From the NCBI GenBank assembly GCA_001949185.1, contig BDGG01000002.1, positions 1,981,826 through 2,045,825 of the forward strand: 64,000 bases of DNA, read 5' to 3'. The notes beneath the pieces were generated by a model. The model was not told the DNA's origin, made no database searches, and saw only the letters and a list, made by a program, of their open reading frames with translations. The stretch is from Ramazzottius varieornatus. Taxonomy: Eukaryota > Animalia > Tardigrada. A program made the translations under genes and the position numbers. Shown in pieces: positions 36,561 to 58,200 of this stretch (position 1 is the first letter of the stretch; the number at the start of each line of letters is the position of its first letter).

Positions 36561-38391
36561 GAGATGTCTGGAGGCACAGTACGACGGTGGAAGTACCTTA
36601 CGATCAACCCGCCTACTTTTGAACAGGAAAATGCGAGTGCGCTCTTTTTGAACAAACCACAAATCTATAGTCAGTTGCGAACAGGAAAAGTTTTGTTTAG
36701 GACTGAGAAGTCGGATACTCCGATGAAATTACTCTCCCTAGGCAGCAGCTTAGGTCTTGTGCTGTAGAGCACACCAGTTTGTTCGCGACCGCTTTCTCTT
36801 TGGTTCCGTATCGCAAAGTTCTTACCGAAGGCGGGTCATGTCGTCGCGGGACAGTATCGAGTAACTGGAAATGTCAGGCGAGCCACACAACACTTCCCAG
36901 CAATATTATGATTTCCTGTGAGCAGAAATGATTATAGCCTTTCGCTGAGGTGCTTCTCAAGCCTGTGCAGTAACTTCCAAAGCGCCATCGCTTGGAGCCA
37001 CCTCAGGTCGATCGTGTTGCGGTTTGATCAAGTTAATGAATACAGCTACATCTCGTCAACTGAAAGCATCAGGCAGGTCGGGTGCTTCATTCTGAAATCT
37101 GAAGTGCGCCTCCTTGCATGAAGTTCAATAGAGCATTATTAAACTTACGCCGTACCGCGCCCTCTAACGCGCTAATCCTAATGCTCCTAATGCTCTAACC
37201 CGCCAATCTCAATCCATGCGCATATTATTGTTCGGTATTGTGGTTCGGCCAACTGGCTTGTTCGGCCAACTGGAAAAGATGTCATGGTCCTATTTATCCG
37301 CAAGACTGAGCGTCAGCTCCTCATGTCAGATGGATTAGTGAGTATTTAAGTGTATTTATTAATTTTTTTATGGAAATATCCACTCAAACCTGATGAACTG
37401 GATATCTAATATTAAGGAAAGCTGAAACATACTTACGTGAACGACATGACATTGTAGGGCTAGCGACTTTGTGTCCTATAAAATCGATCTTGTGAATCAA
37501 ATCTTTATGTTTATTGTATGATTGCAAGAGCAATTGGTTGTGCTCCTGAAGACGTTTCCGACGTGAAATCAGTAGAATACAGTGAACGTGATGTATATCA
37601 TTGTGTGTCACTTTGTTTGTTCCTAGACTTTCCAGCCCAGTCGAGTTCTAGGTTCCTGCTCTAGAGTTTTCCACTCACAAATCGGACGCACGAAATCTGA
37701 TCTAACTGAGCTTGGAATCAGCGTTTAATCAGCTGGTAGTTTTATTACTGCCATTAACACCCTGATTACCACCGTACTCACTGTGAGTACAATACGGCAC
37801 TTTTTCGCTCACCATAATTTCCATTTTGCCCGGTTTGAGTCAAACTTTTTTTCATTGCCTGGTCTGCGGTCTTATCACCGAAACGCAGCTGATGGCCACT
37901 GGTCAGTACAACTTCCGCAGGCTGGAAAAAATCCTCACGATTTCGGGCAGTTTCGGGGGTATTTTAGGTTTCATGTCTTTGCTCGAGATACATAGCTACC
38001 ATCTGTTTAGAAAGACAATGAAACACTGAGGAGAGCTTCCTCTACCGATACTAGGCTTGGGACAAAGTCGGTGTCATCGGTGCGTCCAGAAAAAAATCAA
38101 AACGGCCAGGGCTACTTTTCCCACGTTGGGCTTTACGGCCTTCCAATCTCCACAATTTCGAAATTCTGAAAGTTGTCTATTGGCTAGTTTGGGTTACGCT
38201 TTCCCTTTCCTCCAGTTAAAGTTCTGTGCTCACAGTGAGTACGCTGGTAATCTGCCGACACAAAAAGCTTGGTATTCAGGGTGTTAAATTTGCGCCCACG
38301 AACTCCGACAATCGATTTTACTTAAACGTCAAGATTTTCGCTTCGGCAGACCGTTTTTCCAGCCGAGCCCACGACAGATTTATCAAATAGG

Positions 38392-39474
38392 ATGGAACTT
38401 TTAAGCAATTGGTCCAACTGGATTGAAGCGAGGCACGCCAACGCGTCTCTGTTATCAAGCAACCTTACCGGCGCAAATGCCACGCTGACCACCGATGGCT
38501 CGAATCCTATTGCTGCCTGGTGGATGCTGCTGATCTTCGTTCTGATGACCGCCGTCACGGTTTTCGGGAACCTAGCTATCGTTACATTGTTTCTCGCCGA
38601 CAAAAAAGTCCGTACTCCTTTCAACTACATTTTATTAAATATTGCTATTGGTGATGCGCTGATTGGTACGGTGGATATGCCGTACTATGCAGCGAGCTAC
38701 TTTTACTGGGGTTTCTGGCCGTTTTCCGACCAGCAATGTTCCTTCTGGATGTTCATCGACTACCTCATGCCGACCATAACGCTGGCTAGCATAACCGCTT
38801 TGTCGCTGGACCGTCTTTGGGCCTTGATGGCGCCCATCGCCTATCGGTGCTGTAACACCACGCGGAAAGCTTCTGTGACAATTTTCGTTATTTGGTTGTA
38901 TTCGACGTTGGGGATGCTTCCTGGTTATGCCTACACCCGTCTTTATCTGGCCGATCAAAGAGCAGATAAAACTTGTTTATGGGAAGTGGCAGGTCTGCCA
39001 AACTGGGCTTCGCCTTCCTATCCATTAATTATCAATTTGTGTGCTCCTTTCGCGATTACGCTGCTTTGCTACGTCGGCATCGTGCTGAGGTTGCTTCAGC
39101 TGCGTTCAAGTCGAGCGGCGGTCAACCCTGAGACCCATCGCCAGACAAGCAAGAGGAACCGTCGTGAGCAACAGGCATTTGCAGTGTTGACCTTACTGGT
39201 CGTGACCCTATCCGTCTCCTACATGCCATGGGTGGTCTATACGGTCCGATTAGTGGTATTGAAGTATGAAGACTCATTGACATTCTACAATGTCAGCTAC
39301 TGGATGGGCTTCATTTTGTCAGCTGCCAGTCCTTTCATGGCTCTTGTTGGGAGTCAGGATCTCAGGACTGCGATGCGAAGACTGTGTCATGGAAGATCCG
39401 GCAACCTGGAGAACCCCAGTGGTAACAGAGTATCCGTATTGCGCAAAGCCACCGCTCCGATACCCACCACGTAG
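38392..39474 (+). CDS. Intronless class A GPCR, aminergic (muscarinic/histamine-like), 360 aa
   Basis: Seven hydrophobic segments; TVFGN, NIAIGD, TM3 FWMFIDY (Asp3.32), SLDRL, SYMPW. NPxxY is replaced by SPFMA. Confidence 0.9.
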   Translation: MELLSNWSNWIEARHANASLLSSNLTGANATLTTDGSNPIAAWWMLLIFVLMTAVTVFGNLAIVTLFLADKKVRTPFNYILLNIAIGDALIGTVDMPYYAASYFYWGFWPFSDQQCSFWMFIDYLMPTITLASITALSLDRLWALMAPIAYRCCNTTRKASVTIFVIWLYSTLGMLPGYAYTRLYLADQRADKTCLWEVAGLPNWASPSYPLIINLCAPFAITLLCYVGIVLRLLQLRSSRAAVNPETHRQTSKRNRREQQAFAVLTLLVVTLSVSYMPWVVYTVRLVVLKYEDSLTFYNVSYWMGFILSAASPFMALVGSQDLRTAMRRLCHGRSGNLENPSGNRVSVLRKATAPIPTT

Positions 39475-39673: not shown

Positions 39674-42600
39674 TTATGACCGGAGAGCAGTGTTAATGTG
39701 GTTGGCGGTGATGCGAGCGGCGTCACCCAGGACAAATCCTTCGTGGTTTCCAGTCACCGTCGACACGTTCAGCTTCGTCGTGCACACCTGCGAAAATTTC
39801 CAATATAATTTCAGGCAAAAGAACAACGGCCTCTTGACTTACCTTATCGAGTTCGTAGACTTCACCGAGGTTGCGGATCATCTTCTCCGAGCACTTGATC
39901 AAGGTAACCTTGCCGGTGTACTTGCGAGCAGGCTTGTATGTATCAGCGGCTATCAGACGTTGGGCGAAGAGGTTGGCGGCCTCGCTGAAATCCGCACCTT
40001 GAATGTGACGGAGTTGCGGACAGCGGTGTAGTTCCTCGATGGCCACCTTAGTCTTGGCTTCGAAGCCAGTGGCAGCGGCCAATTTCTCTTGAAGCTGAAA
40101 AACCCAAAGTCAATATCTGAAATTTTGAGCGATAAAAGAAGAGTTCGACTTACCGTCTTGCGTTGCGTCTTGACGAACTGCGTGACAAACATGGTCAGGA
40201 TGGCGTTCTGGAAAGCGTTGTCCTTGCGTCTGTTTAGCTCTTCGATGGCAGCGGTGGGGTCGACCGTGTAGCCAGCCTTCATGGTCTTGGTGAAAGCAGC
40301 CACGAAGGAGTGCGACCCGTCGAGGAGGATGAGGTTGCTGACGGTCTCGTTGCTCTCTTGAAGCTGCAGAGCCATCTCGAAGGCGATGCCGGCACCGAAG
40401 GAGTAGCCGGCCAGGTTGTAGGGACCTTCTGGCTGGATCTTCTTCACCTCCTGCAAACCATGATTATATTTGTTCTAATTTCTTTCAATTTCGTACATCT
40501 ACAAAAAAAGCACTATGTTCTAAACTGAAAGTTCGCCAAACAAATTCAAGCAGGTCGCTTTTTGCAACTGACACACGCTTTTAGCCAATTCAGCCGAAAA
40601 AGTGCGCCACTTCAGAAAATAATGTGGTCCAGCTTATTTAGCTTTTAGGTTTCTCGGTCGTACCTTCAGATAAGACTCCGCGAGTGCTTGTGTGGAACTG
40701 ATGTCGGCTTGTTTGGTGCAGTTCAAGCCATACGCCGTGACTTGCAGATGGTTAGCCAAGGTAGCCAACACGGGGAGCACCGTACCTTCCATCGGGTGGA
40801 CGATGAACAGGGTTACCTTGGAGTCTCGCGACTCGCTCAGCGGGACGATGGCAGTCTTGGGCACGATCTCCTGCAGGTTGTAGTGCTTATTGACGTTCTC
40901 CAACAGCGTCGGGTTCTCGAAGTCGCTGGACGCCTTGTGGCTCTCGGAGAACTTGGCGGCCTCCACAGCGTTGGTGGCGCCCGACAGCAGGCACACGTCA
41001 CGGACACACAGCGAACGGATCTCTTGGAGGGTGAGAGACAGGTCGAAGTCGCGTTCGAGGACTTGACCGAGCTCCATGGCCATCAAAGAATCGATACCGT
41101 AGTCGCCCAGGGACAAGAACATGTCCAGTGAAGCAAAGTCTTTGATACCTAATTTTAAAAGCAGGCATGAGTATTGGAAACCGATTTTGCCTATGCAGAA
41201 TTGGGAGGGCGGTACTAGTAAATGAAACATTTGAGCTCGTTCTTCAAGTTGCGCATGTTCTAGTTGTTATTGGAACGATCTACTTAGAGGAACGATCTTC
41301 TCGAGTTCGATTATTCCCCAAGCGGCGCATGTACCTATATAGCATGCGCCACTTGAAAAAACGATTTCATACGTTTCGTTTGCCAGCATTCCAATTTATG
41401 CCTTCATACCCATAATTTTGGCGACGGTCTGTGGAAGGTGTGACTTGTCTCGTGGTCCTTCACCATCGTCATCGCCGGTGGTGGTGTGCTTCTTCTGACT
41501 TTCCTTGACGGCGTCCAGAAAGAAGATGCCGTGTTGGTGATGGTCGACGATGGTATTCAGCGCATCGAAGTAGGCTCGAGCAGTCAGAGTTGCCTTGGGT
41601 GTTTCAACCTCCGTTTCACCATCTGGTTGTTCACTCTGCTTGGTCTTTTGATCTACAAAAGCAACGTCAGTCAGCAATACAATCATCAAGCAGAAATGGT
41701 ACCGCCCAGATCGTCATCTCAGGTGGCGCACCGTTTTATTGTTATTGGCTAAGAATGTGCGCCACTTGGATAAATAATCTGGGCCAGTTCCCTTCTTGAT
41801 GTCCCAACTCCCAAGTGGTTGATTCAACGATTCATCTTACTCAGAGTTGGACTGTTGACGATGATGGTAGGTCGTCCGCGCTTTTCGCGGCTAGCCAGCC
41901 ACACACTCTGTTGCGACACCGCCTGGTTGACGTTCTTCTCCGTGCCGAAGTTCATCACGACAAACTGTTGCATCTTCTCGTCGGCGTTGGTGTTGGCCAA
42001 AGCTCCATCAATGAGACCCGACTTGTCGTCTCCACCAGCCTTATTCAGGATGTACAAGCCAGTCACCGGGATTTGGCTCGCGACATCACGGAGGACATCG
42101 GGGTGGTCGACGTGGTGGACCAGCTTGGCGCCAGTCGACTCGACGTAGCGCAACTGAGCCGCGGTGGATGCAGCCAAATTGGGACTGAACGTCACAAAGT
42201 GAATGGTGGTAGCACCTTGACTGGCCAACCAGTAAGCTACCTTGGCAGCAATGTTCTCTTCGTCGTTGGCGAAGACCACAAACGAACCTGAAGAAAAAGG
42301 ATAATTTGATAGAACTTGTCCGAAAACGTTTTCACCCAGATCGTTACGCCAACTGGCGCATGTTCTCGTTTTTCTTAGCTGAGAGTGTGCGCCTCTTGAC
42401 AAGACGTTCGGAAAACGGTCGAGGACGAACCTGGCTTGTTCTGTGGGACAGCCAAAGGTACGCTGTTTTGGGTGTTGGTGGTAGATATGACTGGTGGAGG
42501 AAGTGGCAGGAAGGCGCCGTTGGACAGTCCAGTGGCGATGAACTCGTTGACACGGGTGTTCTGATCCTGGACGAAGGAAGCGAACTTGAGGTAAGGGACG

Positions 42601-45600
42601 ATGCGGTGGTTCAGGGCGTAGTGCAGATCAGCAGACGAGGCTTCGGTGGTCAGGGTGTTAGGTTCCAGGTAGACACCACCCTTTTGCAGCAGACGAGAGG
42701 AGGCTCGCAACTTGCTACTCGTTGTTGCGTTGTAGACGATATCAACACCTTGACCGTTTGTCAGCTATACGATAGACTTAGCATTAGAGACCAAAAAGGT
42801 AAATGTCGATGTTGGAAGGTTAATGTTACCTTCGTGATGTGACGGACGAGGCTGGTGGTCAAAGGTGAGTCGAACAGCGTGACAGCCTTGAAGGTATGGA
42901 GACGATCGTTGGCCAAACGAGCCTGTTCCTGACTGAGACCCACAACGAAAGCGTGGTATCCGAGGACGGAAGCCACACGGGCGACAGCCTCAAACTCAAA
43001 GGTGCAGGCATCGGCGTGGATCAGGATGGCTTGGGATATGACGGGGTGCGCGGCATGGGCTAGCTCCAGCAGACCGTAGGCAGCTGTGGCGTACGGACGG
43101 ATGACGTCGGACTCGGACAGTGGCTGGGTGGGTGTGGACAACAAAGTGGCGGGTTGCTTGGTGGTAGGGGTGGCAACGTGGGTGCGGTAGGTGCCCCAGG
43201 TGGCGTGGTGTTCCACGTTGACGAGGAGATCGACGGCGATGATCTCGCGGGGAATGCTACCGGATGAACTAACGGCCACTCTGCAAGATTGAGACCGCCT
43301 CAGAATTCCACTCAACTTAAGTTACAGTGCAAGCAACATTTTTGCGCCTTTTGAATATTCGTTTGGACAATACCGACGTGACAGAACGACATAGCATCGG
43401 CCACGACACTCCAGTTTTCTACGCTTTCCTCACCATGCCTTCAACGTCTGTTCTGCTGGTTCGGAAAATGACCCTCATATGGGTACGAGGTAAACGGCAT
43501 AATTCGGGCATGGCAANNNNNNNNNNNNNNNNNNNNNNNNNNNNNNNNNNNNNNNNNNNNNNNNNNNNNNNNNNNNNNNNNNNNNNNNNNNNNNNNNNNN
43601 NNNNNNNNNNNNNNNNNNNNNNNNNNNNNNNNNNNNNNNNNNNNNNNNNNNNNNNNNNNNNNNNNNNNNNNNNNNNNNNNNNNNNNNNNNNNNNNNNNNN
43701 NNNNNNNNNNNNNNNNNNNNNNNNNNNNNNNNNNNNNNNNNNNNNNNNNNNNNNNNNNNNNNNNNNNNNNNNNNNNNNNNNNNNNNNNNNNNNNNNNNNN
43801 NNNNNNNNNNNNNNNNNNNNNNNNNNNGTAGTTTGCCGAGTGGAAAAACTTGTTTACGGTAGCCTTAAACAGTTTTGAGGATGATCTGGTGGACGGAATT
43901 CGAAAAACAGGACTCTAGCCAGAGGAAGGTATCGCTAATGTTAAAAAGCCTACGAAATGAGATTGAGAAGGGCCACAAGAGGCGCTTGACTCGATTTATT
44001 TAACAACCTTCGTTGACGTCATAAAGCTCGTTTGAAGTGAAAAAAGACTTTCACATGACAAAACACTGCTCGATGATGCATTACCGCCGGTTATAGTCAG
44101 CGGCACACGCTAACCAGCAACCTGACACGTGCTGCCACCCCATACCGCAGGCTTGCCCGAATTATGGGTCGGAAATTGCCATGCCCGAATTATGCCGTTT
44201 ACCTCGTAGTCGACAAATGACTCGAACAAAATCGTCATCCCAAGTGGCGCACATTTTCAGCCAATAACAATGCAAACGTGCGCCTGTTGAGGTAACGGTC
44301 GTGTTCAGTTCATTTAACGACTTCTCAATCATTATGATTTATGCGGTTGCTTACCGGAGTGGTCCACCGTTGGAGTCCTTGTTTCGTGCCACGACGGCAT
44401 CGACCACCATGGCGTCGAAGGTGGGCATGGTCAACCACACCCGGCCAGTACCGTCTAAGGTGCTGCTTTGCTGAGCCTTCTCACTGACATCATCCAAGAA
44501 GCTCTCGACATCCTTCTGATCACGGAACTGTGGCACTGGCACGACTGTTGGGGTGGTAATCCTGGTACTCTGGCCCATCTTGCGGCACAACAGCGTGCTA
44601 CTGACCAGTCCATCGCGATGAGCGGCCACCACCTGGAAACCTTCCTTAGCCAAAGCCTCAGCAAAGTCAGTCAAACCTACGATCGAGAAACCATCGCTTG
44701 ACTTTTGTTTGTGTTGATTGATTGATACTCAGTACCTGGTAGAATGCTCTTCTGGCTTTCTTCGCCAAAGGCTCCGAAGAAGTTCCAGACGCTGGCGTAC
44801 TTCTCCAATGGCTGGACGACCATGAGGTAGCCATCGTTGGCGATCAAGGTCGACAGACCGCGCAGTTGGTTGGGGACGGCTTCGACACCTTGGGTGAAGT
44901 AGTTCTTGGCTACCAGGACGGAGGCAGAAGCGGGCTCGATTTCCACCGACTGGTTGGACTTGATGGCGACGGTCTTGTACTCCACGGTGACGTTGGGTGT
45001 GGTGTGCACTTGGTTTGATGAAAGGGACTTCAGACCTTCTTGGCCAGTCTGCACCAACTCAAGAACCTTCACTTCGTTACCTGAAGGAATATCAAAATTC
45101 AAACTTCCGCCCCCACGAGGACTCGAAAGCACCAGCACAGTGCCGGCATGAAGCTCAAGGACTGGAGTCCGGCAAAAAACCTGGGAATGGCCGTTACCCT
45201 GGTGGCGCACGTTTACTTTGTTATTAGCGAAAGCGTACGCCACTTGGATATTACAGCAGAATTGCTTTAGGCGCACCTCTCCGCTGTTATCAACTGGAGA
45301 TGTGCGCCACTTGAGACCGCGGTCATCCCGAGATTGTTTGTCGGTCACCCACAAAGTACAACTTTTAGATTTTGATGCTTACCCGGGAAGTTTTCGACTG
45401 CAAGTTCCAGTAGCTGGGCGATGGTCTTCTGGCTACCCAACTCGGCCAAGTAGGCGTCATTCTGTACCAAGGTCTTGTAGTTGGGCACAGTCTTCTTGAC
45501 CATATCCTCGACGCTGCTGTACTGTTGGCCGTTGATGCCGGAGAAGACAGAGGTGATGAGCTGCAAGAAGCCGGCGTCACCTTGCTCGATGGTTCGCTTG

Positions 45601-48600
45601 ATCTCTTGGTTGGAGTAGTTGTGGCCGTTGAGGAGGCTCTGATGAGACTGGATTAAGGTGGTGATCTGCTTGGGTGCCTTGTTCTCGTTGACCAGGCGCG
45701 AAGCCTCGGACAGGATGTAGTTGGAGCATAGCTTGGCGTAGGCTGTGTGCGGGTTCTTCTCGTTGGCGGTGCTGGTCATGTCGAAGGGCACAAAGTTAGC
45801 TTCCTTCAGGATGTAGGCACCCTGTTGGGAATGGGTGGGCAACGGTGTCCAGGTGATACCTTCCATCTCGAGGCCAGGAGTGAAAGCAATGTCCAAGTCG
45901 GCCAAAGCTTGAGCTCGGGCTCCATTTTGAGAAGACGCAGCCAACTGGGGGAAGTTTACCTGCATAAAAACTAAGCTATATTCATCTGCAGAAGAATCTG
46001 CTCAAAACAGCAACTTGAGAGCGCAAAACAGACTCGGCCACATCGATGCCCGCAAGTGGCGCATACTTCCAGCCATGAACGCTGGAAAAATGCGTCACTT
46101 GGAACAACAATCAAACTGGTCGATATTGTCTGTTTTCCCAACTGGCGCACAATGCAGGCTTATAACACCGAGGGAGTGCGCCGCTTGGGAAAGCAAGGAA
46201 ATCTGAAGAGGTCGCTCATAAAAAGGCTGGTCGATTACCTTCATGGACTGGATGTTGGTCACACGAGCCAGCTGACGCTTCGGCAAGCTCAATGCATGAA
46301 GTTGGATCAAGCCATCGATGGCGGTCTCGTGATGACGCGCGGTGATGATGGCGGTGCCGTCTTGAGCGGACAGGCCATCGAGGACTTGGTAAAGTGGACC
46401 AAAGTCATAGCCACGGTAGGCCAGTTCTTGGTAGATGGCCGACTGGTCGATGGTGGAGGATCCAGTGGTCTCGATCTGGTCTTCGCCGCATGGTGTGCTT
46501 GAGCTACCGACGTAACCGGTCATGATGACATTCTCGCCGTGAAGGACCTCAAAGTAGCCGGTGGACTTGACAAAGTTGACGTTGAAGGCCACGGATGGCT
46601 TGTGGTCCAGCTCGATGGGCTCACCCGGGAAGTTAACGTTGGAGAACTCCAGTTGCGGGCACTTCTCGATGGTGTTGCCGGTCTCGACGGCGAATGCCTT
46701 GGCCACCACACTGATCAAACCTACAGTCAAGAGCAAATCCCCATTTTTCCACCTAACATAATCGCTTGTGTGACATTTCTATATTCTATGTAAGCATGTT
46801 TTATCACTATTTTCGGATGTTCCAGACTTGCACGTTTTGCTACGGTCTTTCAATTGTTTAAATTGAAGAACCTGACTGCCTTATCGGCCAGCTCGTTTCA
46901 GTACACGTATCAGCTTATTTACCTCCGATGGGGAAGACGCTTCGTTGGTTGATCTTGTGGTCATGATAACGAGCGTTGAGTTGCTCAGTCAGATCGATGG
47001 TGGTCGTTCTCTGCGAGGAGCCGCTGCCACCTTTGTGGATGAAGTCGGTGAAGGCCGGAATTCGCCACTACGGAAGCGACACAACACGGTAAGTTAGATG
47101 TTTCCTGCAAGATAAGAGGACGATGTCTTACGAAGGCCGAATGGTCCCATCGGACGACAGAGCCAATGAAGGGCGTGTCTCTGGGAGCTGGGAGACTGGG
47201 CTTGGGGAATATCTCGTTAACGTGTGGATTCAAGCCGTTGACGTACAGCTTGCCGATGCTCTCTAAGAAGTACTGGACGTTATTGGATGCGCCGCGCTTC
47301 ATTAGTGCGACTGTGGTGCACAGTGGGCCGACCGTCTTCTTGATCAGGGCTTGGAGAAGTCCGTGGGGAGCAATCTCGATGCAGATGGCGTTCTTGGGTA
47401 TCTTGACCATCACTTCGTGGAACTTGACGGTGGTGCGCAGGTTGTGGGCGAAGTATTCGGCAGAGGAAGTCTTGGCCAGATCGGAGTTCCAGTCGGACTC
47501 AGGGACTGAGCTGGACAACCAACGATCAGTTCGACTCTTGGGGTTGGTCAGAGTCTGGAAAAAATGTTGAATTTGAAGATTGTAATTCATTAATTGTCAA
47601 GTTACTTATGTACAGAGAGTAATTCTCCCACTGGTGTGAAACGTAACTTTAATGACAGAAATTGTCGCCTTTTCGCCGCACGTACTTTAAAATCCCACAT
47701 GTCACTTGGGACGGGAGTAAATGACTTGGACCATAATGGACCTCCAAGTGGCGCATGCTTCGGGTCAATAAGAATGGAAACGTGCGCCACTTGAAATAAC
47801 GGTCTGATTAATTCATTTGCCAGTGTCCCAAATGGCTCTTTGATTGTCCCAACTTCGCAGAGCGATTGCATCATATTATTCTAGAAAGTATGCTGTAAGC
47901 GTCATTGTGCGTTGGTTTACCTTCTTCAAGGCTTCGAGGTAGATTGGTGAAGCTTTCTGCATAGCCGGTGAATGGAAGGCAATGCCGTAGCTCTTGACTT
48001 CCTTAGCAAAGATGTTCTTCGCCTTCAGTTCCTCGACGAACTTGTTAACAGCGTCAGCGGGTCCCGAGATAGTCACGTTGTCTTCAGCGTTGTTACAGGC
48101 CACATTCACCTGCGGGTGGTTCTTGCACATCTCGGTGGCATCAGCGGCGCTCAGACCAACGGCGGCCATTGCACCCGGAGCTAAGCCGGCTTCCTGTAAC
48201 CACAGGTGTGTCAACTCGTCCTTCGGTTGATTCATTGACTGATGAATTACCTTGACCGCGCGACCTCTCCAGTAAGCAGTCAAGACCGCTTCTTCCGCTG
48301 TGAAGCATCCATCGGCATAAGCACAGCCGATTTCGCCGGCACTGTGGCCAATGAAACCTTCAGCGTTGATCTTCAAGGCTTGGAGGAGGTCGACCAGGGC
48401 CACTTGGATGGCGGCGATGCCGACGAAGGAGATGGTGGGATCGTCGTAATCAGCCTCGGTGGCGGTGGACAGAAGCTGAACCAAGTCGAGGTTATATGGC
48501 GTCAAGGCAGCGGCGCACTTATCGATGGACTTGCGGAAGAAATCCAGTGTGACCATTTGTTGACCCATCGAGGCCCATTGGGTACCTTGACCGCTGCAAA

Positions 48601-51464
48601 ATAAATCGCCATGTCAGTTGCATAATTTTCACCATTTTTGTTCGATTATGGGTCCATCTGAACGGAAATCAAGCAGAAGCAACGTACAAATACGTTGTCG
48701 ACCACATGGTTTCTATTGCGAACGACCAAACGTCTCATGGCACGCATAAATAGAAACCACGGTAATGCTGTGTTATATGATACGAGAGTAGACCTCGGTT
48801 TCTGTTTGAATGGTCCATTCTAAAAGTTTCTCACCTGAAGATCCACCAAACGGGCTTCTGCTCAACAGCCACACGTTCAACGACAGTCTGGGGCTCTCCT
48901 GAGTTGGTGATGGTGTACGCTCGGTAAGGCATAGAAGCGGGCTTGGCAAAGGCGCTTTGCATCAGGAGGTACGGGACGTATGGGTTGTCGGGGTATCGAT
49001 TGATGTACTCCATGGCGTGTCGGGCGGCTTCTTCGGTTCGACCCATGTAGACGGCCAGGCGGATATCGCTGATGGAGGTGTCACGGGTCTTGGGATTGCC
49101 ACGGACGACGAGATGACTGTTCTGACCACCGAAACCGAAGCAGTTGATACCAGCTAGCGTGCAGTCCCACTTGAAGGGCTCAGTCACCACCTTCAGGCGA
49201 CCATCGACCAGAGCGGGGATCAGCGGGTTGGGGTTCTTGTAATGCAGATTGGGTGGAATGATGCCAGTTTGCATGGCGATCATAATCTTGCATACACTTA
49301 CGGCACCTAACCAGGAGAAATATATTTTTTTTGATATTTTTTCTATTTAGTCATCTCAAGTGGCGCACGATTCCGTTGAATTTGGCTGAAAGTATGCGCC
49401 ACTTGGGGAAAACGGTTTTGGTTCCGCTCTTTTGCCCACGTCCATGTGACGTTTCGCTAGCTTCCTTCTGGAAAAACGGCGTTGCAGATTTGGCAACTCT
49501 TGGTGTTGTGGTTGGGTAATGAGCGGGCCATTTACATCAGTGGTAAAGCGACTCACGCTGCGGTAGCGTGAGGTGGAAATTTTGAGGATGTCATTGTTGA
49601 GCTGCGGAGATGTTAGAAAGCGTGAGTAAGGTACCTGAGGCATGTTCCGAATGGCCCATGTTGGACTTGACAGCACCAATCGGCAGCGGTTTGGTACGAG
49701 TATTGGCAAAGCCTAGAGCGATACCGTTGGTTTCTTGGGGATCCCCAATCTTGGTGCCTGTTCCGTGAGCTTCGACGTATTCCACATCTTCCGGGTCGAT
49801 ACCGGCTTCGGCGTACACTTCGCGGATCAACTGACCTTGACTTTCCGTGCAAGGAAACGTGATACCTAAAGACGATATCCAACGATTACGACCACGAAAC
49901 ACCTGACTGCAAAGTTAGAACCAAGCCAAAATTACTTTTCGCTAACCGCTTCACAAAAAATTTTCTGCTCTTTCTCCGTAAACCAGTCGTTTCTCTACTG
50001 TAATTCGTTCATTACAAGGCACTGAAAGATATCCAGATTTTCCTCAATTGGGAGGCTGGTAAAAAAATCTAGGGACGATCGCCATTCCAAGTGGCGCAAT
50101 TTTATCTGCTTTGGCTGAAAACCTGCGCCATTCGGCATATCAATCGGTCCGAGACTGTTTGCCGTTCTTCCACTTTTCACCGAATTACACAACAATTGTG
50201 TCAAAAAAGGCCAGAAGGTTTCCGCTGTCAGTCAGGTACCTTGCTCCTTGAAGCCATCGTTGTTAATTTTGCTGTGCAGCAGTGTGGCGTAGACTCGTCG
50301 AGCGTCTTTGCGCTTCTGAAGCATGATACAGACGATGGCTTCGGCGCGCACGTAGCCGTCGGCGGCTTCGTCAAAGACCTTGCACATTCCGTCCTTGCAC
50401 AGAAGACCCAGCTTGAGGATCTGGTAGGAGACCTTGGGTTGGTAGACCAAGCTGACACCACCGACCAGCGCGGCCTCGCAGACGCCGTGCTTGATGTGCA
50501 GGAAACCCTGGTTGATGGCCACACCACTGGTGGCGCAGGCGGCATCCACACCGTAACTGGGACCTCGAAGGTCGAAGGTGAAGGACAAACGGTTGGCCAA
50601 GAAGGCACGATGCGTACCGATCAGCGAGTAACCATCGATCTCTGCAACGACATGAAAACATTTACCGATGATATTCTGCAAATCGAATACACTCCACATG
50701 ACTGTCCTTTCGAGTGGCGCATTTTCCCCAGTACTATTGCTGAAAAAGTGCCGAGCTTGCCGCTTAGCGAAGACGACATAAAGGTCTTCCTAAGTGGTGC
50801 ATTTTCTGGTTGTTGGTGGCTGGCGGCTTGCGCCACTTGAGATAACCATGTTGAACGTTTAGTTTGCCGACCACAGAAAATATTTGGAGATTACGGCACC
50901 ATTTTTGCGAGGTGGATCGATGCGACGGAAAACTGTGGCTTTACCTGAAACATCAACGGAGGTCCAGGCTTCACGGGCGTCCGAGTTGGAAGTACCGATG
51001 AAGACCCCGGTGTTGGAGTTCTTCAGCTCGGCGGGGTCGATACCAGCGTCGATGATACTTTCGTAGGCAACCTCGTGAAGGATTCTCAACTGAGGATCCA
51101 TGCCTTCGGCCTGCTTGGGATGGACACCGAAGAAGGTGGCGTCAAACTTGCGAATATCCTTGATGAACCCATGCTGTTTGGGTACGCCGAAATGGTCCTC
51201 GTCGCAACGCTGCAGGTTCTCGTGGACCATGTTGACTCCATTGTACAAGTTCTCGGCGAACTCTTCAATGTTGTCCGACTGCGAGCAACTACCCGACAAA
51301 GTATTAAGTTGGAAAATCGAAAACACACTGAAAAAAAATCGAGGAATTAAAGGGAAAGGGGAGTCTTACCGAATAGACATTCCAGAGATGACAATGTCAT
51401 CGGGCGACTCAACTCCAGCAGAGCCATTTTGGGTTGTCGGTGAGTTTTCCTGAGCGTGCACCAT
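39674..51464 (-). CDS. Type I FAS-like megasynthase KS-AT-DH-psiME-psiKR-ER(dead)-KR(dead)-ACP-TE; probable non-reducing animal FAS-like polyketide synthase, ~21 exons
   Basis: ATG at 51464 ([14 protein letters not shown]). KS DAAC/EAHGTGT/MGHSE; AT GQGTQW/GHSAG/AFHS; [13 protein letters not shown] and DGLIQ; ACP GIDSL; TE GYSFG/LLDGS/GNHE; stop at 39674. ER and KR nucleotide-binding motifs are absent. Confidence 0.9.
41720..41768. repeat. Intronic palindrome copy (FAS-like intron)
   Basis: CAGGTGGCGCAC-N25-GTGCGCCACTTG. Confidence 0.85.
43484..44208. mobile_element. Tc1/mariner-type MITE in a FAS-like gene intron (contains the assembly gap)
   Basis: Perfect inverted repeats of at least 33 bp: TACGAGGTAAACGGCATAATTCGGGCATGGCAA (43484-43516) and 44176-44208. 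TA ends; subterminal GCCCGAATTATG repeat. Confidence 0.85.
43517..43827. other. Assembly gap (N run)
   Basis: Run of n characters. Confidence 1.
46053..46187. repeat. Tandem pair of intronic palindromes (FAS-like intron)
   Basis: 46053-46101 and 46139-46187, both with 25-nt spacers. Confidence 0.85.
47745..47793. repeat. Intronic palindrome copy (FAS-like intron)
   Basis: CAAGTGGCGCAT-N25-GTGCGCCACTTG. Confidence 0.85.
49357..49405. repeat. Intronic palindrome copy (FAS-like intron)
   Basis: CAAGTGGCGCAC-N25(..TTTGGCTGAAAGT)-ATGCGCCACTTG. Confidence 0.85.
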
Positions 51465-52286: not shown

Positions 52287-55200
52287 TCACCAGTCATAAC
52301 TTTGGGATTTGTCTTTCTCAGCTTGGTTAACCGGTTTGTGCTCCATGTACGGACTCTCTCTGCCGGCATGCGCCGGGTTCTTGTACTCACCCAAAAACCT
52401 CCGAGCTTTCGCATCCATTTTGTAGTTCCCTTTAAAAGATAACGTGCAACTCAAAATCATTTCGAAATAAGAAAACTATTAAGAGGAAATTTTACCCAGT
52501 ATTTTCCTGGACTTGACTTCGCTGGCGGAAGTGGGTCCATTCTGCTGCTTGGGCGTCACTGTCGCATTCTTCGGTGCGTGTTTCTCCCCATCAATGCCAT
52601 CCAGTGCATACACCGACGTGGTCTTTCCGCTGACGATGAAGTGTGGACGTTGGACGGGTGTTAGACGCAAAGACTGGTTCTTTGAACGTCTACGATCCCG
52701 ATGGAAGAGCTGACCGAACAGCGAATGATTCCTCTGGAAGGACAACACAATATCATCAATCAACCGACCAGACCAGAAAATGTTAAGCTGACCCCACGAC
52801 CAATGAATCAGTTCATCATTTCGAAAAAGCGGAAAGAATCATGTGGCCGTTAAACAAAACGTTCAAGATCGTTATCTGAAGTGACGCACAGCTCCATCTC
52901 TATTGGCTACGCGCGTGCGCTACGCAGGAAAACGATCTCGCCGTGTCTGATTGTTTACCCAAGTGGCGCAGGTTTTCGGTGCCATTGCCTGGAACCGTGC
53001 GGCAATCAGAGAAACGATCTTGTACGTTTTTTTTATCCGACTTCCCAGGTCATAAAGAAGTTTTCCCAACAATGAACGGTTATTTTGGTAACTTACTCTG
53101 TGCATAGGTTCTTCGCCGTCCATTTCGTCGAGGTTGCCCGATATGGTCCGTCTAATTTGGGGGCCAATTTCGCACAGTGATCTAAGGCCGGCTTTCAGTG
53201 CCACGGTGTGTTCTTCGTCCTTGAGAGCGCGGTTCTGCATTTCTTTGCGCTTCTTGAAGCGGCGGAAATAGTCTTGAATGAGGAATGTAGCGTAGAACTT
53301 GCCCACCGTTACGTCCTCGTCACCAGGTGCCGGGATGATCAGGTCCAAAAGTCGGTTGGACGTTCGCTTCCAGATCTTCTTGATAATATACCGTAGCTCG
53401 GCGTTGTTCTCGTCAATGTTGGTTTCCTTGCTCGTCTTGATGTCCAGGGAAGTTCGCACAAGGGCAAATAACGTCGCGTTGAAGTTGACTGTTCCGTCTG
53501 CATTCAACGGCATGTTCATCGAAACTAAACGCTGTAAAGGAACGGAGAAACAACGAATTACATTTCGCAGATTCAGTTGGAAGAATGTTAGACCCACCAA
53601 CAGCCCAGTCCCTCAGCCACTTCCATACACAAACCCTAAATTGCGCTCATGAGTGAGTGTATGCAGGTCGGTGAGAGAAAATTACATTTCATTTGCATTA
53701 TGCGCCTGCATACTTGGCTAGACCACGACCGCGATACCTCCTGCATGCGGGTGCGTGACGCTTGCGAATTTGTGATAGAGGAAACGCATACCTTGCAAGC
53801 GATACGATGCGGACATAACGCACCAAAGCCCAGCGGCGGGTTGATCTTCCTCAGCAGCGTCACAACGTCCAAATGCTTGATCCTTCCCTTCGCATCCGGG
53901 TCGTACTCGCTCCACAACCGAATGAACTCGTCCAGATGATGAGGACCTGGAGAGAAAGATTTGTCGACAACGGGTTACTCTATGAAAAGTGGATGAAGTT
54001 ACCTAGGATGGACCAGTCTCTGGTTAAGTAGTCAAAGTTGTCCATGATGACAGCCACGAACAAGTTGATGATGAGGAAGGAGCAGACGATGTAGAAGGAG
54101 ATGAAGTAGGCGTATGAGAAGGTCGTCCCGCACAGTGTCCCTTCCGGTTCGCCAGAAGCCGGGTCGCACTTGACAGTATCACGGTTGGCGCATGACAACA
54201 TCACCTCCTGCCAGTTCTCCCCCGTTGCACACCGGAAGAGCGCTAGGACTGCTTGTGGGAAAGACTGGAAGTTGTTGTTGGGCGAAATCTCACTGTCGTC
54301 GTTGTCCAAGGCAATCTTGCCGAATATCTAAGAAGGAAAACATAAAATCACCAAACCAAATATAAACCAGGGTGCACCGTCATTCATCGATGTTGAAGTC
54401 GCCCTTGATTTCTATTTCAAGAGGCCATACTGTCGGAAGTTTCAAAAAAAATCACGTTCACTGAAATATCGGCTGGACTTTTTCAGGGGCTACCTGCATG
54501 CCGATGACAGCGTAGATAAAGAAAAGCATGACGATGAGCAGGGCGACGTAAGGAAGTGCTTGAAAGGACTTGATGAATGTCCACAGCAGCGTACGGATGC
54601 CTTCTCCACGAGCTAGAAGCTTCACCAAACGCATGGCGCGGAACAGCCGAAAGAAGTTAACTCGCACGATCTTGTGCCCACCCTGAGAGAAAAACGCCCT
54701 TGGTATATGCATTAAGTCGAATAGCTTTCTCGAGTTATAAATTCTCACGATGTGACTAGACTTACCTCGCTCATCGCAGAGTAGATAATGTCGATGAAAC
54801 TTCCCAGCACGATGATGAAATCAAAGGAATTCCACGCATCTCCGAAATAATTCTAAAAGATATCAGTTAGGATTTTCACCACGGAAGGAGCACGTAGGAT
54901 GACAACGAGATGAATAAGAACTTACTTTGAAACGAAAGGCGATGATTTTCAGGATACTTTCCAAGGCGAAGACAGAAGTGAAGATGATATTGAGCCAATC
55001 GAGGAGCTCCGAATAAGCTCTTGGCTGCCCTTCAAACTGCAAATAAAGTTGCAGATCAAAATCGATACAGGTCCAACCTTCCTCCGGCTGAGAAGGTTGT
55101 TCTTCAAAAGAGTTACCTTCATAGCCAGGGTGATAGTGTTGAGGACGATGAGTGCAAAGATGGCATACTCGAACGGCTGTGAGGTGACCAGCCACCATAC

Positions 55201-58200
55201 TCGGTACTGGAAGCGGTTCTTGGGAATGTACCGTCGGATAGGCTTGGCTTTCAGGGCAAACTCGACGCACTTCCTCTGCCACAACAAAATACTCATCAAC
55301 ATACATATACAAAGAACGACTGACGGACCTGGTTTCTGTCCAGTTCGCAATTCTTGTATTCCTGTTCTCCTTCTTGCTGGAACGTGACAATGACGAAGCC
55401 GACGAAGATGTTGACCATGAAAAAGGCAATGACGACCAGGTAGATGATGAAGAACATGGCAATGTATGGGCGGTGGTTGAAGGTCGGCCCGTGGTTCTCA
55501 ATGTTGGAATCGATGGCTTTGTACGTCAGCCTGAAAAATTCACGATTATGAAAATCGGGAAAGACTTTACCGAGTTTTAAAAAAAGCATCTTACGTTGGC
55601 CATCCTTCAAAAGTAGAGACCGCGAATAGCGTCAGCAAGGCCTTAGCCACATCATCGAAATTGAACTTGTTGTTCACCCACTCGCGTGGCTCGATCTTCA
55701 CCGCATCATCTAGGTCATTTCCGGAGTAGACCAGAAATTCCCCTCTAAAAAATACACGTAAATATTCTAAAACCAGTGCAGTGAAAACCACGCCACTTTA
55801 GAGAAACCGAAACTCTGCCATACAATATCATATGCTGCGTATGCGGTTCAGAAGTATCGTCTTCCGTAATAGAAACCAGGGGAGAGCCAAACGTAAGTCC
55901 GGCAAGGTCCACCCTGGTTTCTACTATGTACGACCGACTTTCGGTTGGAAGCAAGGGTGGACCCTTTGATGATGAAAATTTCCAAACGGACTTTCGGCCA
56001 CGAATGGTCCGCCCTTACGTTGCTCAGTTGGAAGTTTTTTCGTCTGAGCATCGAACAGAAACTTACTGGCAATCGTCTTCCGTTGATTTGGATGGATCGG
56101 TACAGTCGTAGAAGCGTCCCTTGAAGAGCTGGACGCCGACAACAGCAAAGCAGAATTGCAGCATGTATGTCACGATGAAGACATTTCCGATGACTTGTAC
56201 TGAGGTGATGAGACATTGGACAACGTGCTGTTAGTTGGAAGGGCGCCATAGGAGGAAAAAAGAGAGAAACGAGTTAGTCGGGGTTCGCTAGTCTAGACTT
56301 CTCACCTGTACTCCTATGCAGGCGAAGATGAACTGTTGGATGGATATTCAAAAAACGAAAAAAGCAGAGATCAGCACAGAGTATAGTGAGGGAAGGAGGG
56401 AGGGCAAGTGCAGAGGAAAGGGGAAGTGGAAAAAGGCACCTGAAGCATGAAAGTAACCAGCATGATATTCCAGATGGTCTTGATAGCCACCACCACGCAC
56501 TGCACCACGTGCTATAACAGAGAAGAACACCGATGAGAAGTGGGAAAAAGCGTGAAAAAAATCACCCAGATCAATTAGAAACTTCTCTTCAAAGCATCTT
56601 CGAAGCCAAGGCTGTAGGAAAAAGGGCGTGGATAAACACCGCGGACACTCGTAAAGAAAGCCCGCAGCCCGCATAACGACCCCGACATTAGTATAAACTT
56701 GATGGAAGACTAGGCTGAATCTTGTTTTGGACTGACATATTTTTGACGGTGTATTAATAGTATTTTCTAATTTTATGGTATTTTCGGTTTACCTTTAGGC
56801 CTTTTGCTCGGTTGATGGCGCGTAATGGACGCAACACCCGGCACACTCGGAGAATTTTCACGGCGGAGAACTGCGAGTTCCTGATGATAGGGGGAAAAGT
56901 TGAGACTTCATCAGTTTCTTCAAAGCCTTGACGTCAGAATATTTCTTACTCTAGCCCATAGGAGACGATAGAGACTCCAACGACCATGATATCCAGCATG
57001 TTGAACTTGTTCCGGCAAAAGGCTTCCGGATGGCCGATCACACCGTAAGTTATCAGTTTGAGGAGGATCTCAATGGTGAAAACTGATGTAAAAGCGTAAT
57101 CGAAGAAGTTCAGAATCTACGAAGATCAAAATATCTATGAAAAGCAAGTGAAGGTTAGCAAAACTTTGGGGAAAAATTTTCGTACAGTACCTTATTTCGA
57201 TCGCTTTTCTCCGAAGGAATGACGGGGTCTTCAGCGGCCAACATGGCACTACTGACCAAGATACAGACCAGCACGACGTTGCCGAAATAGCGATGGTTAC
57301 AGACGAAATGACAAAAGACTCGAAACTTGTTATCAGGTTGGAAGACAAAGAAGGACGTGTAGGGGGGAATGGGTTTCTTCTCTTCGGCAATATTAATCTC
57401 GGACATGCGTCGAGGCCTTGCGCGCGGTGTATCGGGCTCCTCAGCGTCCTCGAGAATTTCTTCCTCCTCGGCGTCTTGATCTTCCGGTCTCAGTGCCAAA
57501 CTGGCTTCTCGGTGTCTTCCGCGCCGTTCTTCGTTGATCATCTCGATACGCATCCGAGTGGCGACGGGGCTGGGAGTCGATCGAGGTCGAGCGGCTTCCA
57601 CGTCACCATCGGGCTGCTTCTTCTCCTCCTCGATCAAGGATTTCTTGTCCGACTCTTCGATCATAGCCTACGACCACACAACCAAACTGTCAAAACTATT
57701 ATTTCTAACAGTGACAATACTGATTTTGCTAGATCGGCGTTAAGTAACGGTATGTTCCTACACCTGCATACGACGCATTATGCTTCAAACACAGTATGCA
57801 TGTATGTAGGAACATGAGTTGCAATCGACGGAAATGCACCGGTTCAAACTGTTGACCCTTTTGTGCACATGAATTCCCGCACTTCAGGCTGTCTTCATAA
57901 TAAGTCAATATCATACTGCACATGAGTATGCAGGTGCATGCGGTATGCGAAACGTTCACATCAAGTATATTTATAGGAGGAGTACAGAGCATCGTACCTC
58001 GGGGACATCTTCTTCTTCTGGTGTTGCTTCGCCGTCAGGAGGGAAGATTTGTATCTGAACTGGGTCGTCGGAGATGCGAACGCGGTCGTGGTTCGATACT
58101 TCATTGGAATCATGGATGGAGCTTTGGTTGGACCTGTTGGAGGTACTCGAAGACAGCGAAGCCCTCCGTTCGCGCTCCCTCTTGGCTGCAGCTCTTTCTT

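What the first reader, a model, noticed from the sequence alone, without database searches (positions are those of the whole stretch)
39674..51464. FAS-derived megasynthase with both reductase domains inactivated: candidate non-reducing animal polyketide synthase
SEEN: the spliced ORF has the full animal-FAS domain order and intact chain-building and release residues: KS Cys (DAAC, 50535-50537) plus both His (EAHGTGT, MGHSE), AT Ser (GHSAG, 48341-48343; AFHS), ACP Ser (GIDSL, 41087-41089), and the TE triad (GYSFG 40400-40402, LLDGS, GNHE). The two NADPH-binding Rossmann motifs are gone. ER reads [19 protein letters not shown] where animal FAS has LIHSGSGGVGQAAIAIA. KR reads [25 protein letters not shown] where FAS has SYIIAGGLGGFGLELAQWL. 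The KR catalytic Ser/Tyr segment (FSSVS...GQSNYGFAN) is replaced by [20 protein letters not shown] found no stops or frameshifts across ~21 exons, so this is not simple pseudogene decay. KNOWN: without KR a type I synthase cannot make saturated fatty acids and leaves poly-beta-keto chains that cyclise to pyrones or aromatics, as in fungal NR-PKSs. Animal FAS-like PKSs are known from molluscs and arthropods. INFERENCE: this is a neofunctionalised FAS paralog making an unreduced polyketide, for example a pigment or a UV-screening/antioxidant phenolic or quinone. Automated annotation would call it 'fatty acid synthase'.
Basis: partly seen in the sequence, partly recalled or inferred. Interest (0 to 1): 0.92.

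Follow-up and report, generated by a model that had tools for sequence, protein, structure and literature searches.

The report
Tardigrade fatty-acid synthase lacking both reductases
The water bear's only full-length fatty-acid-synthase gene is intact and expressed but has lost both of its NADPH-using reducing domains, so it probably makes unreduced, polyketide-like chains rather than fat, and the animal may not be able to make fatty acids itself.

Summary
On the minus strand, 51464-39674, lies a 20-exon gene with a 7134-nt CDS (2377 aa) and no internal stop. Spliced RNA contigs from four runs in four studies give one exon chain. They join 44355 directly to 43280, so the N gap is intronic. The ER has lost its NADPH loop and about 115 aa of its N-subdomain. 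The KR has lost its glycine loop and its Ser/Tyr segment. Both regions still have coding-type codon usage. An unnamed environmental orthologue (42-47% identical there) shares the same defects, so the inactivation is old and the pseudo-domains are kept.

The gene is GAU91939.1 of Ramazzottius varieornatus. Lin et al. 2024 used it as the tardigrade representative of canonical FAS.

The 55.8-Mb assembly has no canonical FAS, only this gene, a shorter KS-AT-ACP paralogue and the mitochondrial KAS.

Non-reducing chain extension giving pyrone, beta-keto or aromatic products is the best reading, but it is untested. FAS-like enzymes with decayed KR also occur in insects and are predicted in molluscs, so this is a new variant of a known kind. 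The scan had noted the ER deletion and DH dyad on this same window.

The parts
51370..51464 (-). exon 1 (aa 1-31), start codon at 51464; KS N-terminus ([10 protein letters not shown])
   Evidence: Predicted from ATG/GT..AG and homology. The junction SGMSI|RCSQSDN equals the published GAU91939.1 text.
50945..51288 (-). exon 2, KS
   Evidence: Pfam PF00109 E 9e-24; junction prediction; matches the GAU91939.1 text.
50240..50641 (-). exon 3, KS with active-site Cys182 (50535-50537, DAAC)
   Evidence: Pfam PF00109 E 3e-32; alignment; coordinates.
49635..49865 (-). exon 4, KS C-terminal half with His314 (EAHGTGT) and His352 (MGHSE)
   Evidence: Pfam PF02801 E 4e-27.
48835..49306 (-). exon 5, KS end and KS-AT linker
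   Evidence: Pfam PF16197 E 9e-27; junctions.
47921..48593 (-). exon 6, AT with Ser599 (GHSAG, 48341-48343), Arg624 and His722 (AFHS); about 20-25 extra residues after Arg624
   Evidence: Pfam PF00698 E 1e-51; BLAST splits at the insertion.
47132..47554 (-). exon 7, AT C-terminal part and linker
   Evidence: Pfam PF00698 E 1e-14. The 3' end is fixed by the RNA contig loose end at 47132.
46923..47067 (-). exon 8, DH start with His917 ([11 protein letters not shown]; the canonical Gly is Gln)
   Evidence: RNA joints; alignment.
46239..46720 (-). exon 9, DH with Asp1064 (AIDGLIQ)
   Evidence: RNA joints; Pfam PS-DH E 2.5e-6.
45383..45959 (-). exon 10, DH end / pseudo-methyltransferase region
   Evidence: RNA joints. 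No Pfam hit. Coding-type codon usage.
44736..45080 (-). exon 11, pseudo-methyltransferase region
   Evidence: RNA joints.
44355..44676 (-). exon 12, pseudo-ME end / pseudo-KR
   Evidence: RNA joints. Weak match to crinoid FAS-like P0006 residues 1365-1472.
43281..44354 (-). intron 12 (1074 nt as assembled) holding the N gap 43517-43827 and a 33-nt perfect inverted repeat (43484-43516 / 44176-44208)
   Evidence: All four runs join 44355 to 43280 with GT..AG; inverted repeat.
42830..43280 (-). exon 13: pseudo-KR end, then ER remnant (ER0). About 115 aa of the substrate-binding N-subdomain are absent. The NADPH loop HSGSGGVGQAA reads [12 protein letters not shown].
   Evidence: RNA joints; alignment. 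No Pfam or PDB hit. FAS-ER HMM gives only 4.4 bits. Orthologue P0189 shares the deletion and the LIHAD loop.
42431..42764 (-). exon 14: ER C-terminal remnant
   Evidence: RNA joints. 30% identity to FAS ER in BLAST. FAS-ER HMM 28 bits, E 6e-9.
41841..42287 (-). exon 15: KR remnant (KR0). GGLGGFG reads [27 protein letters not shown] reads MNFGT-(7-residue gap)-EKNVNQAVS.
   Evidence: RNA joints; alignment. No Pfam, PDB or database hit. FAS-KR HMM 3.9 bits. AF2 gives beta-alpha-beta topology for residues 1-80.
41410..41652 (-). exon 16: KR end / linker to ACP
   Evidence: RNA joints.
40664..41148 (-). exon 17: ACP with Ser2016 (GIDSL, 41087-41089) and start of TE
   Evidence: 5' end fixed by the RNA loose end. 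Pfam PP-binding E 4e-6..
40154..40450 (-). exon 18: TE with Ser2174 (GYSFG, 40400-40402) and Asp2201 (LLDGS)
   Evidence: Pfam Thioesterase E 2.5e-18; junctions.
39843..40094 (-). exon 19: TE
   Evidence: Junction prediction; BLAST to FAS TE.
39674..39787 (-). exon 20: TE end with His2355 (GNHE, 39743-39745) and stop codon 39674-39676

Best explanation
This is the FAS-type megasynthase of the tardigrade Ramazzottius varieornatus (GenBank protein GAU91939.1). Its order is KS-AT-DH-pseudoME-pseudoKR-ER0-KR0-ACP-TE, 2377 aa. Shown: the gene is spliced and expressed. The condensing (KS), loading (AT), carrier (ACP) and release (TE) parts keep their catalytic residues and near-normal conservation. 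The two NADPH-dependent reductase domains have lost cofactor loops, catalytic residues and, for ER, a whole subdomain. They are nevertheless kept in frame as structural pseudo-domains. Inferred: the enzyme can load acetyl or acyl and malonyl units and condense them on its ACP, but it cannot reduce the beta-keto groups. It would therefore act as an iterative non-reducing synthase. Its products would be unreduced chains released by the TE or by spontaneous lactonisation. Candidates are triacetic-acid-lactone-type or alkyl pyrones, beta-keto acids, or aromatics. They would not be palmitate. The assembly holds no canonical FAS, so the animal probably gets its bulk fatty acids from food and only elongates them.
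For: The exon chain and expression come from spliced contigs of 4 runs in 4 studies, all with GT..AG introns, and the gap is intronic. The CDS is open over 7134 nt, and a 7362-nt RNA contig fits it. All catalytic residues of KS, AT, DH, ACP and TE align with canonical FAS. The ER and KR motifs are destroyed and the ER N-subdomain is absent.

The collapse is domain-specific. Against bird, bee and clam FAS the gene scores KS 53%, AT 49-50% and TE 32-40%, but ER 29-31% and KR 17-20%. Canonical FASs share 63-69% and 56-64% in ER and KR. ER and KR exons get no Pfam or PDB hit.

The ER0 and KR0 exons keep the codon usage of the catalytic exons, while off-frames and introns do not. An unnamed orthologue (P0187-P0189) is 42-47% identical in these exons. 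It shares the ER deletion, the LIHAD loop and a glycine-free KR loop. The loss is therefore old and the open frame has been maintained.

The genome has type I KS only here and in one truncated paralogue, plus the mitochondrial KAS, and no FAS-type KR or ER elsewhere. ACC, ELO elongases and a PPTase are present. Metazoan FAS that cannot reduce the beta-keto group releases pyrones (PMC12856111). Lin et al. say of mollusc AFPKs predicted to have inactive KR that they should likely lead to aromatic compounds (PMC10764717).
Against: No product, enzyme assay or phenotype exists. The TE is as conserved as in true FASs and the DH dyad is retained. Both facts would also fit an enzyme that still handles long or beta-processed acyl chains. 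Trans-acting reductases cannot be excluded by sequence. Absence of a canonical FAS rests on one 200-contig assembly. Contigs cannot exclude rare isoforms. Exons 1-7 and 17-20 were not covered by my single read-laying run. They rest on homology, on contig length and, for the KS exons, on the published protein text.
Confidence: 0.5

Rival explanations
1. It is still the animal's fatty-acid or lipid synthase. The cis KR and ER are dead, but free-standing reductases (an SDR and an MDR or TECR-type enzyme) act in trans on the ACP-bound chain. The cis DH dehydrates and the conserved TE releases long-chain acids.
For: No other FAS exists in the genome. The DH His/Asp dyad is retained. The TE is as conserved as in true FASs. 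ACC is retained. Generic SDR loci exist. Trans-ER is known in fungal PKS (LovB/LovC; my own knowledge).
Against: No FAS-type KR or ER fragment exists anywhere else in the genome, only weak generic SDR hits of 24-44 bits. Trans-KR complementation of an animal FAS has no precedent that I know of. The DH is clearly relaxed, at 22-25% against 37-44% among true FASs. ACC is also needed for the elongases.
Confidence: 0.2
2. It is a relic with no catalytic role. It would be an expressed but functionless gene on its way to pseudogenisation, or a purely structural protein.
For: Two of its seven activities are gone. The DH and pseudo-domain regions are strongly diverged.
Against: Every KS, AT, ACP and TE catalytic residue is kept. 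KS and AT are about 50% identical to FASs of other phyla. KS dN against the old paralogue is 0.09-0.15 with dS saturated. There are no stops in 2377 codons. Codon bias is kept in all exons. The defects are shared with a 42-47% identical orthologue that is also open. The gene is present as spliced RNA in 16 runs of 6 studies.
Confidence: 0.08
3. It is an assembly or annotation artefact. Intact ER and KR exons would then be hidden in the N gap or in unsampled isoforms.
For: A gap of estimated length lies between the pseudo-KR and ER exons. Contigs drop rare variants.
Against: All four runs join 44355 to 43280 across the gap. The destroyed NADPH loops and the KR catalytic segment lie in sequenced, transcribed exons. 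The ER deletion lies inside exon 13, not at the gap, and is shared by P0189. The published protein is the same gene.
Confidence: 0.02

Closest known systems
Animal type I fatty acid synthase (FASN; e.g. bird P0005, bee P0017, clam P0151)
   Same: The domain order is the same, including the pseudo-ME, pseudo-KR and a C-terminal TE. KS is 53%, AT about 50% and TE 32-40% identical. All KS, AT, DH, ACP and TE catalytic residues are present. Lin et al. 2024 picked it as the FAS representative of Tardigrada.
   Different: The KR glycine loop and Ser/Tyr segment are gone. The ER NADPH loop and about 115 aa of the ER N-subdomain are gone. ER and KR identity falls to 29-31% and 17-20%, against about 60-69% among true FASs. 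It cannot run the reductive cycle by itself.
Animal FAS-like polyketide synthases (AFPKs; Torres et al. 2020, my own knowledge; Lin et al. 2024, PMC10764717), especially mollusc mo-clade 2 with predicted inactive KR
   Same: It is an FAS-derived iterative megasynthase with altered reductive programming. Inactive KR is predicted to give aromatic or unreduced products.
   Different: Mollusc AFPK clades 1-3 lack a TE, whereas this gene has one. AFPKs are defined by KS phylogeny and HMM score, and by that criterion this protein was filed as FAS. AFPKs are described as enzymes distinct from the animal FAS, whereas here no canonical FAS is left.
Insect 'fatty acid synthase-like' paralogues with decayed KR (e.g. 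P0044 Epargyreus, P0083 Plodia, P0074 Tuta, P0087 Thrips, P0120 Frankliniella, P0067 Adelges)
   Same: They have FAS architecture, and some keep a TE motif. Their KR glycine loop and catalytic segment are degenerate, with a deletion in the same loop.
   Different: They keep an ER glycine motif and the ER N-subdomain, with ER HMM scores of 90-250 bits against 4+28 here. They form their own clade, from which the window's KS and AT exons are excluded in the best trees, although an AU test cannot reject joining (p 0.30). No sequence similarity between their KR remnants and this one was found.
Fungal non-reducing PKS (SAT-KS-MAT-PT-ACP-TE/CLC)
   Same: The expected chemistry is the same: iterative condensation without beta-keto processing.
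   Different: There is no SAT and no PT domain. The only trace is a sub-threshold SAT hit inside the AT (21 bits against a cut-off of 22.8). The ancestry differs. A DH-derived fold with a dyad is present, but nothing shows a PT-like role.

Membership tests
Animal type I FAS (by descent and architecture) | Domain order KS-MAT-DH-pseudoME-pseudoKR-ER-KR-ACP-TE on one polypeptide | tested here: met
   Exons align colinearly to 33 full-length FAS or FAS-like proteins. Pfam finds KS, AT, DH, ACP and TE. ER and KR are recognisable only as remnants in the right places.
Animal type I FAS (by function) | KR with a GGxGGxG NADPH loop and a catalytic Lys/Ser/Tyr/Asn set | tested here: not met
   The loop reads ANDEENI. 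The Ser/Tyr segment reads MNFGT...EKNVNQAVS with a 7-residue deletion. FAS-KR HMM gives 3.9 bits. No Pfam or PDB hit.
Animal type I FAS (by function) | ER with a GSGGVG NADPH loop and a substrate-binding N-subdomain | tested here: not met
   The loop reads [12 protein letters not shown]. About 115 aa of the N-subdomain have no counterpart. Only the C-terminal remnant scores, at 28 bits.
Animal type I FAS | KS/AT/ACP/TE catalytic residues (Cys-His-His; Ser-Arg-His; Ser; Ser-Asp-His) | tested here: met
AFPK (animal FAS-like PKS) | KS falls in an AFPK clade or HMM-score class separate from FAS (Lin et al. 2024) | tested here: inconclusive
   Lin et al. used this protein as 'picked_FAS'. My single-exon trees put it in an unresolved polytomy outside the insect FAS-like clade. 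An AU test cannot reject joining that clade (p 0.30). AFPK-Finder was not available, and the joined KS-AT tree was left out.
AFPK (animal FAS-like PKS) | Product is a polyketide rather than a saturated fatty acid | not testable with these tools
   This needs an enzyme assay or metabolite analysis.
Fungal-type non-reducing PKS | SAT starter domain and PT product-template domain | tested here: not met
   No PT hit. The SAT hit is sub-threshold and lies inside the AT.

The most novel reading that the evidence does not exclude
Ramazzottius, and perhaps eutardigrades generally, have no reducing cytosolic fatty-acid synthase at all. The ancestral FAS-type gene was converted long ago into a non-reducing polyketide synthase. 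That would make a free-living animal a fatty-acid auxotroph. Its sole FAS-type enzyme would now make a pyrone or aromatic metabolite, possibly linked to the unexplained brown coloration or the UV and oxidative tolerance of this species.
Probability: 0.3. Interest if true: 0.8.

Novelty: new variant of a known kind. Interest (0 to 1): 0.6.

Why it matters
De novo fatty-acid synthesis by a type I FAS is regarded as core animal metabolism. To my knowledge its loss is known mainly from parasites. Here a free-living model extremophile appears to lack any reducing FAS. It keeps, under selection, an expressed FAS derivative that can only condense. If confirmed, three things follow. The tardigrade would be a dietary fatty-acid auxotroph. 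Animals would gain a naturally occurring 'KR/ER-null FAS' for studying how FAS architecture turns into PKS chemistry. An unknown tardigrade metabolite would become a target for discovery. There is also a practical warning. This very protein served as the tardigrade 'FAS' reference in a phylum-wide FAS/AFPK study, so KS-based classification misses functional loss in the reducing domains. CRISPR knockouts are possible in this species (PMC11175437), so the prediction can be tested directly.

Tried and rejected
I therefore had no DNA for P0001 or P0187-P0189 and no dN/dS on the ER0 and KR0 exons.
- The metagenome scan with the AT exon gave 39 loci. All are 44-57% identical canonical-type FAS genes of other organisms, with no match to exons 8, 10-13, 15 or 16. 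No orthologue was found.
- The database search with the KR0 exon found nothing. A search with P0189 found only its own cluster.
- The ESM Atlas look-alikes of the KR0 exon were only unnamed bacterial clusters, which is uninformative.
- AF2 on the KR0 exon used a single sequence and reached mean pLDDT 55, with only residues 1-80 usable. Foldseek gave no hit at E <= 0.001. PKS ketoreductases appear among generic Rossmann folds at E 0.009-0.04, which is suggestive only.
- Single-exon trees are poorly resolved. The AU test could not decide whether the gene belongs with the insect FAS-like clade. The C1 paralogue's AT exon, at 39% identity, was left out of the AT tree.
- dN/dS against the C1 paralogue has saturated dS, so only dN is usable.
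- Literature searches for tardigrade FAS or PKS found no description of this gene's defects.
- Depth in RNA contigs was not used to rank expression, as the tool advises.
- Joined step left out: no search, fold or tree was run with the joined 2377-aa model. Exons were searched one by one by reference. A local script concatenated the exon chain in memory only to count its length and stops, and no joined sequence was printed or saved.
Full report
**What is there.** The minus strand between 51464 and 39674 carries a multi-exon gene whose stop-free segments hit KS, KS_C, the KS C-terminal extension, AT, PS-DH, PP-binding and Thioesterase in Pfam. The segments in the ER and KR positions hit nothing. 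Those two segments also find no chain in the PDB, although mammalian FAS structures are there.

**The gap and the transcript.** I tested the gap first. Sixteen public runs from six studies hold about 60% of the sampled words of 41800-46000, which is the signature of spliced RNA. I laid contigs of four runs from four studies on 41200-47100. All gave one and the same chain. After applying the stated cut shifts, every intron is GT..AG on the minus strand. All four runs join 44355 directly to 43280. The 1074-nt intron therefore contains the N gap 43517-43827, and no exon is hidden there. The gap abuts a perfect 33-nt inverted repeat, which may explain the assembly break.

**The gene model.** I placed the remaining junctions by GT..AG, frame and homology. 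The model has 20 coding exons and a 7134-nt CDS of 2377 aa with no internal stop. It fits a 7362-nt RNA contig with about 110-120 nt of UTR at each end.

**Identity.** The assembly has 55.84 Mb in 200 contigs. The supplement of Lin et al. 2024 (PMC10764717) contains 'picked_FAS_GAU91939.1_Ramazzottiusvarieornatus'. Its KS text equals exons 1-4 here, including my predicted junctions. The gene is therefore GAU91939.1 of the tardigrade R. varieornatus. It was used as the tardigrade representative of canonical FAS for HMM training. I found no paper that mentions its dead reductases.

**State of the domains.** I added the exons, as separate rows, to an alignment of 33 full-length FAS and FAS-like proteins.
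- Intact residues: KS Cys/His/His, AT Ser/Arg/His, the DH His...Pro and Asp (the canonical Gly is Gln), ACP Ser, and TE Ser/Asp/His.
- ER: HSGSGGVGQAA reads [12 protein letters not shown]. About 115 residues of the substrate-binding N-subdomain have no counterpart, and the deletion lies inside exon 13.
- KR: GGLGGFG reads [27 protein letters not shown] reads MNFGT, then a 7-residue gap, then EKNVNQAVS.
- HMMs built from seven canonical FASs give the KR exon 3.9 bits. They give the ER exons 4.4 and 28 bits, each in the colinear position.

The decay is domain-specific:

| Domain | Bird, bee and clam FAS vs each other | This gene vs them |
|---|---|---|
| KS | 60-63% | 53% |
| AT | 54-61% | 49-50% |
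| DH | 37-44% | 22-25% |
| ER | 63-69% | 29-31%, over two thirds of the columns |
| KR | 56-64% | 17-20%, over 130 of 225 columns |
| ACP | 38-53% | 33-41% |
| TE | 28-38% | 32-40% |

**Not a decaying pseudogene.**
- The ER0 and KR0 exons have the same GC3 and the same in-frame codon log-likelihood (+0.36 to +0.43 per codon) as the catalytic exons. Off-frames and introns are negative.
- A search with the ER0 exon found three unnamed ENA proteins, P0187-P0189. They are 42% identical in exon 13 and 47% in exon 14.
- These proteins share the ER N-subdomain deletion and the LIHAD(S/L)HAVNLEAV loop.
- Where P0189 reaches the KR, it shows a glycine-free loop, SHVIFAQTAVDAAVKMAYW. The flanks are conserved and the former loop residues are free to vary.
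- The inactivation therefore predates a deep split, and both lineages kept the frame open. This argues for a retained structural role, like the pseudo-ME and pseudo-KR of normal FAS.
- A single-sequence AF2 model of the KR0 exon gives a beta-alpha-beta Rossmann topology for residues 1-80 (pLDDT 70-86). Foldseek hits are only weak and include PKS ketoreductases.

**Genomic context.**
- A bird FAS and the KS and KR Pfam models were searched against the whole assembly. They find type I KS only here and at G000:C1:6.862-6.872 Mb. The mitochondrial KAS lies on C9. No FAS-type KR or ER exists anywhere.
- The C1 gene is an old paralogue. Its KS exon is 78% identical, dN is 0.09-0.15 and dS is saturated. 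Its order is KS-AT-short DH piece-ACP-TE remnants. Its AT serine motif reads GYGTG, and it has no ME/ER/KR block.
- The 'paralog of a canonical FAS' idea is therefore wrong for this assembly. There is no canonical FAS.
- ACC, at least three ELO elongase loci and a PPTase are present.
- Neighbours in the window are GPCRs, a trypsin-like gene and a calcium channel. No tailoring enzymes are adjacent.

**Comparison with known kinds.**
- Lin et al. describe AFPKs in molluscs and arthropods. They predict inactive KR in mollusc clade 2, saying such proteins should likely form aromatic compounds.
- Among the 150 nearest cluster representatives, many insect 'FAS-like' proteins from Lepidoptera, thrips, an adelgid and others also have glycine-free KR loops and a deleted catalytic segment. 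They keep an ER motif.
- In trees of the KS exon 3 and the AT exon 6, the tardigrade genes fall outside that insect clade (support 91 and 99*). The backbone is a polytomy, and an AU test does not reject joining (p 0.30).
- Whether the gene descends from FAS proper or from a panarthropod FAS-like lineage stays open.

**Mechanism.**
- Shown: intact condensing, loading, carrier and release sites; no NADPH sites; expression.
- Inferred from FAS and PKS chemistry: iterative condensation without beta-keto reduction. Engineered metazoan FAS that loses ketoreduction releases pyrones (PMC12856111). Plausible products are therefore triacetic-acid-lactone-type or alkyl pyrones, beta-keto acids, or aromatics.
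- The conserved TE and the retained DH dyad keep a rival alive, namely a lipid synthase served by trans-acting reductases.
- My estimates are about 0.5 for the non-reducing synthase, 0.2 for the trans-reductase rival, under 0.1 for a functionless relic and about 0.02 for an artefact.

**Limits.**
- Only one read-laying run was available, so exons 1-7 and 17-20 rest on homology, on contig length and, for exons 1-4, on the published KS text.
- No search, fold or tree used the joined protein. Exons were searched one by one by reference.

Noticed in passing
G000:C1:6862548-6871738 (loci L025, L026), minus strand: A second, old FAS-derived paralogue. Pfam finds KS, KS_C, the KS extension, AT and PP-binding only. 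The AT nucleophile motif reads GYGTG instead of GHSxG. There is no counterpart of exons 10-16 (ME/ER/KR) or of the TE serine exon 18. Its KS exon is 78% identical to the window gene (dN 0.09-0.15, dS saturated), but its AT exon is only 39% identical. Whether it is expressed was not tested.
   Followed up: partly
proteins P0044, P0083, P0074, P0024, P0092, P0087, P0120, P0067 (insect 'fatty acid synthase-like'): Many insect FAS-like paralogues (Lepidoptera, thrips, an adelgid) have a KR without the glycine loop (e.g. VILCDNDLVG) and with the Ser/Tyr segment deleted, while keeping a GGAGALGQA-type ER loop. KR-intact members sit in the same clade, so KR decay looks recurrent in insects.
   Followed up: partly
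proteins P0187, P0188, P0189 (ENA, unnamed, contigs 852-2246 bp): These are environmental fragments of an orthologue from an unidentified organism. They share the ER deletion and the dead ER and KR loops. The ORF runs through what is a 65-nt intron in the window and shows no break at the exon 14/15 junction.
   Followed up: partly
window 43484-43516 and 44176-44208: A perfect 33-nt inverted repeat lies inside intron 12. One arm directly abuts the N gap, and one RNA-run contig shows an 'opposite strands' joint at 43828/44153. It is probably a hairpin-forming insertion that broke the assembly.
   Followed up: partly
window about 48188-48256 (exon 6): The AT carries about 20-25 extra residues ([19 protein letters not shown]...) just after the malonyl-binding Arg624. 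Canonical FASs lack them, and BLAST alignments split there.
   Followed up: no
window 27468-28046 (-), 30974-31918 (-), 38326-39471 (+), 52923-61272 (-): The neighbours are a trypsin-like gene, two rhodopsin-family GPCR genes (one single-exon, ending 200 nt from the FAS-like gene's stop) and a voltage-gated calcium-channel gene (Ion_trans, Ca_chan_IQ). No biosynthetic or tailoring genes flank the synthase.
   Followed up: partly
G000:C17:642691-645492; C3:1550044-1551140; C4:2770790-2771676; C14:1349643-1350855; C12:1570375-1570596; C9:483765-484691: The genome keeps acetyl-CoA carboxylase, at least three ELO elongase loci, one PPTase and the mitochondrial KAS. Malonyl-CoA supply, ACP activation and elongation of dietary fatty acids are therefore available despite the missing canonical FAS.
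   Followed up: partly
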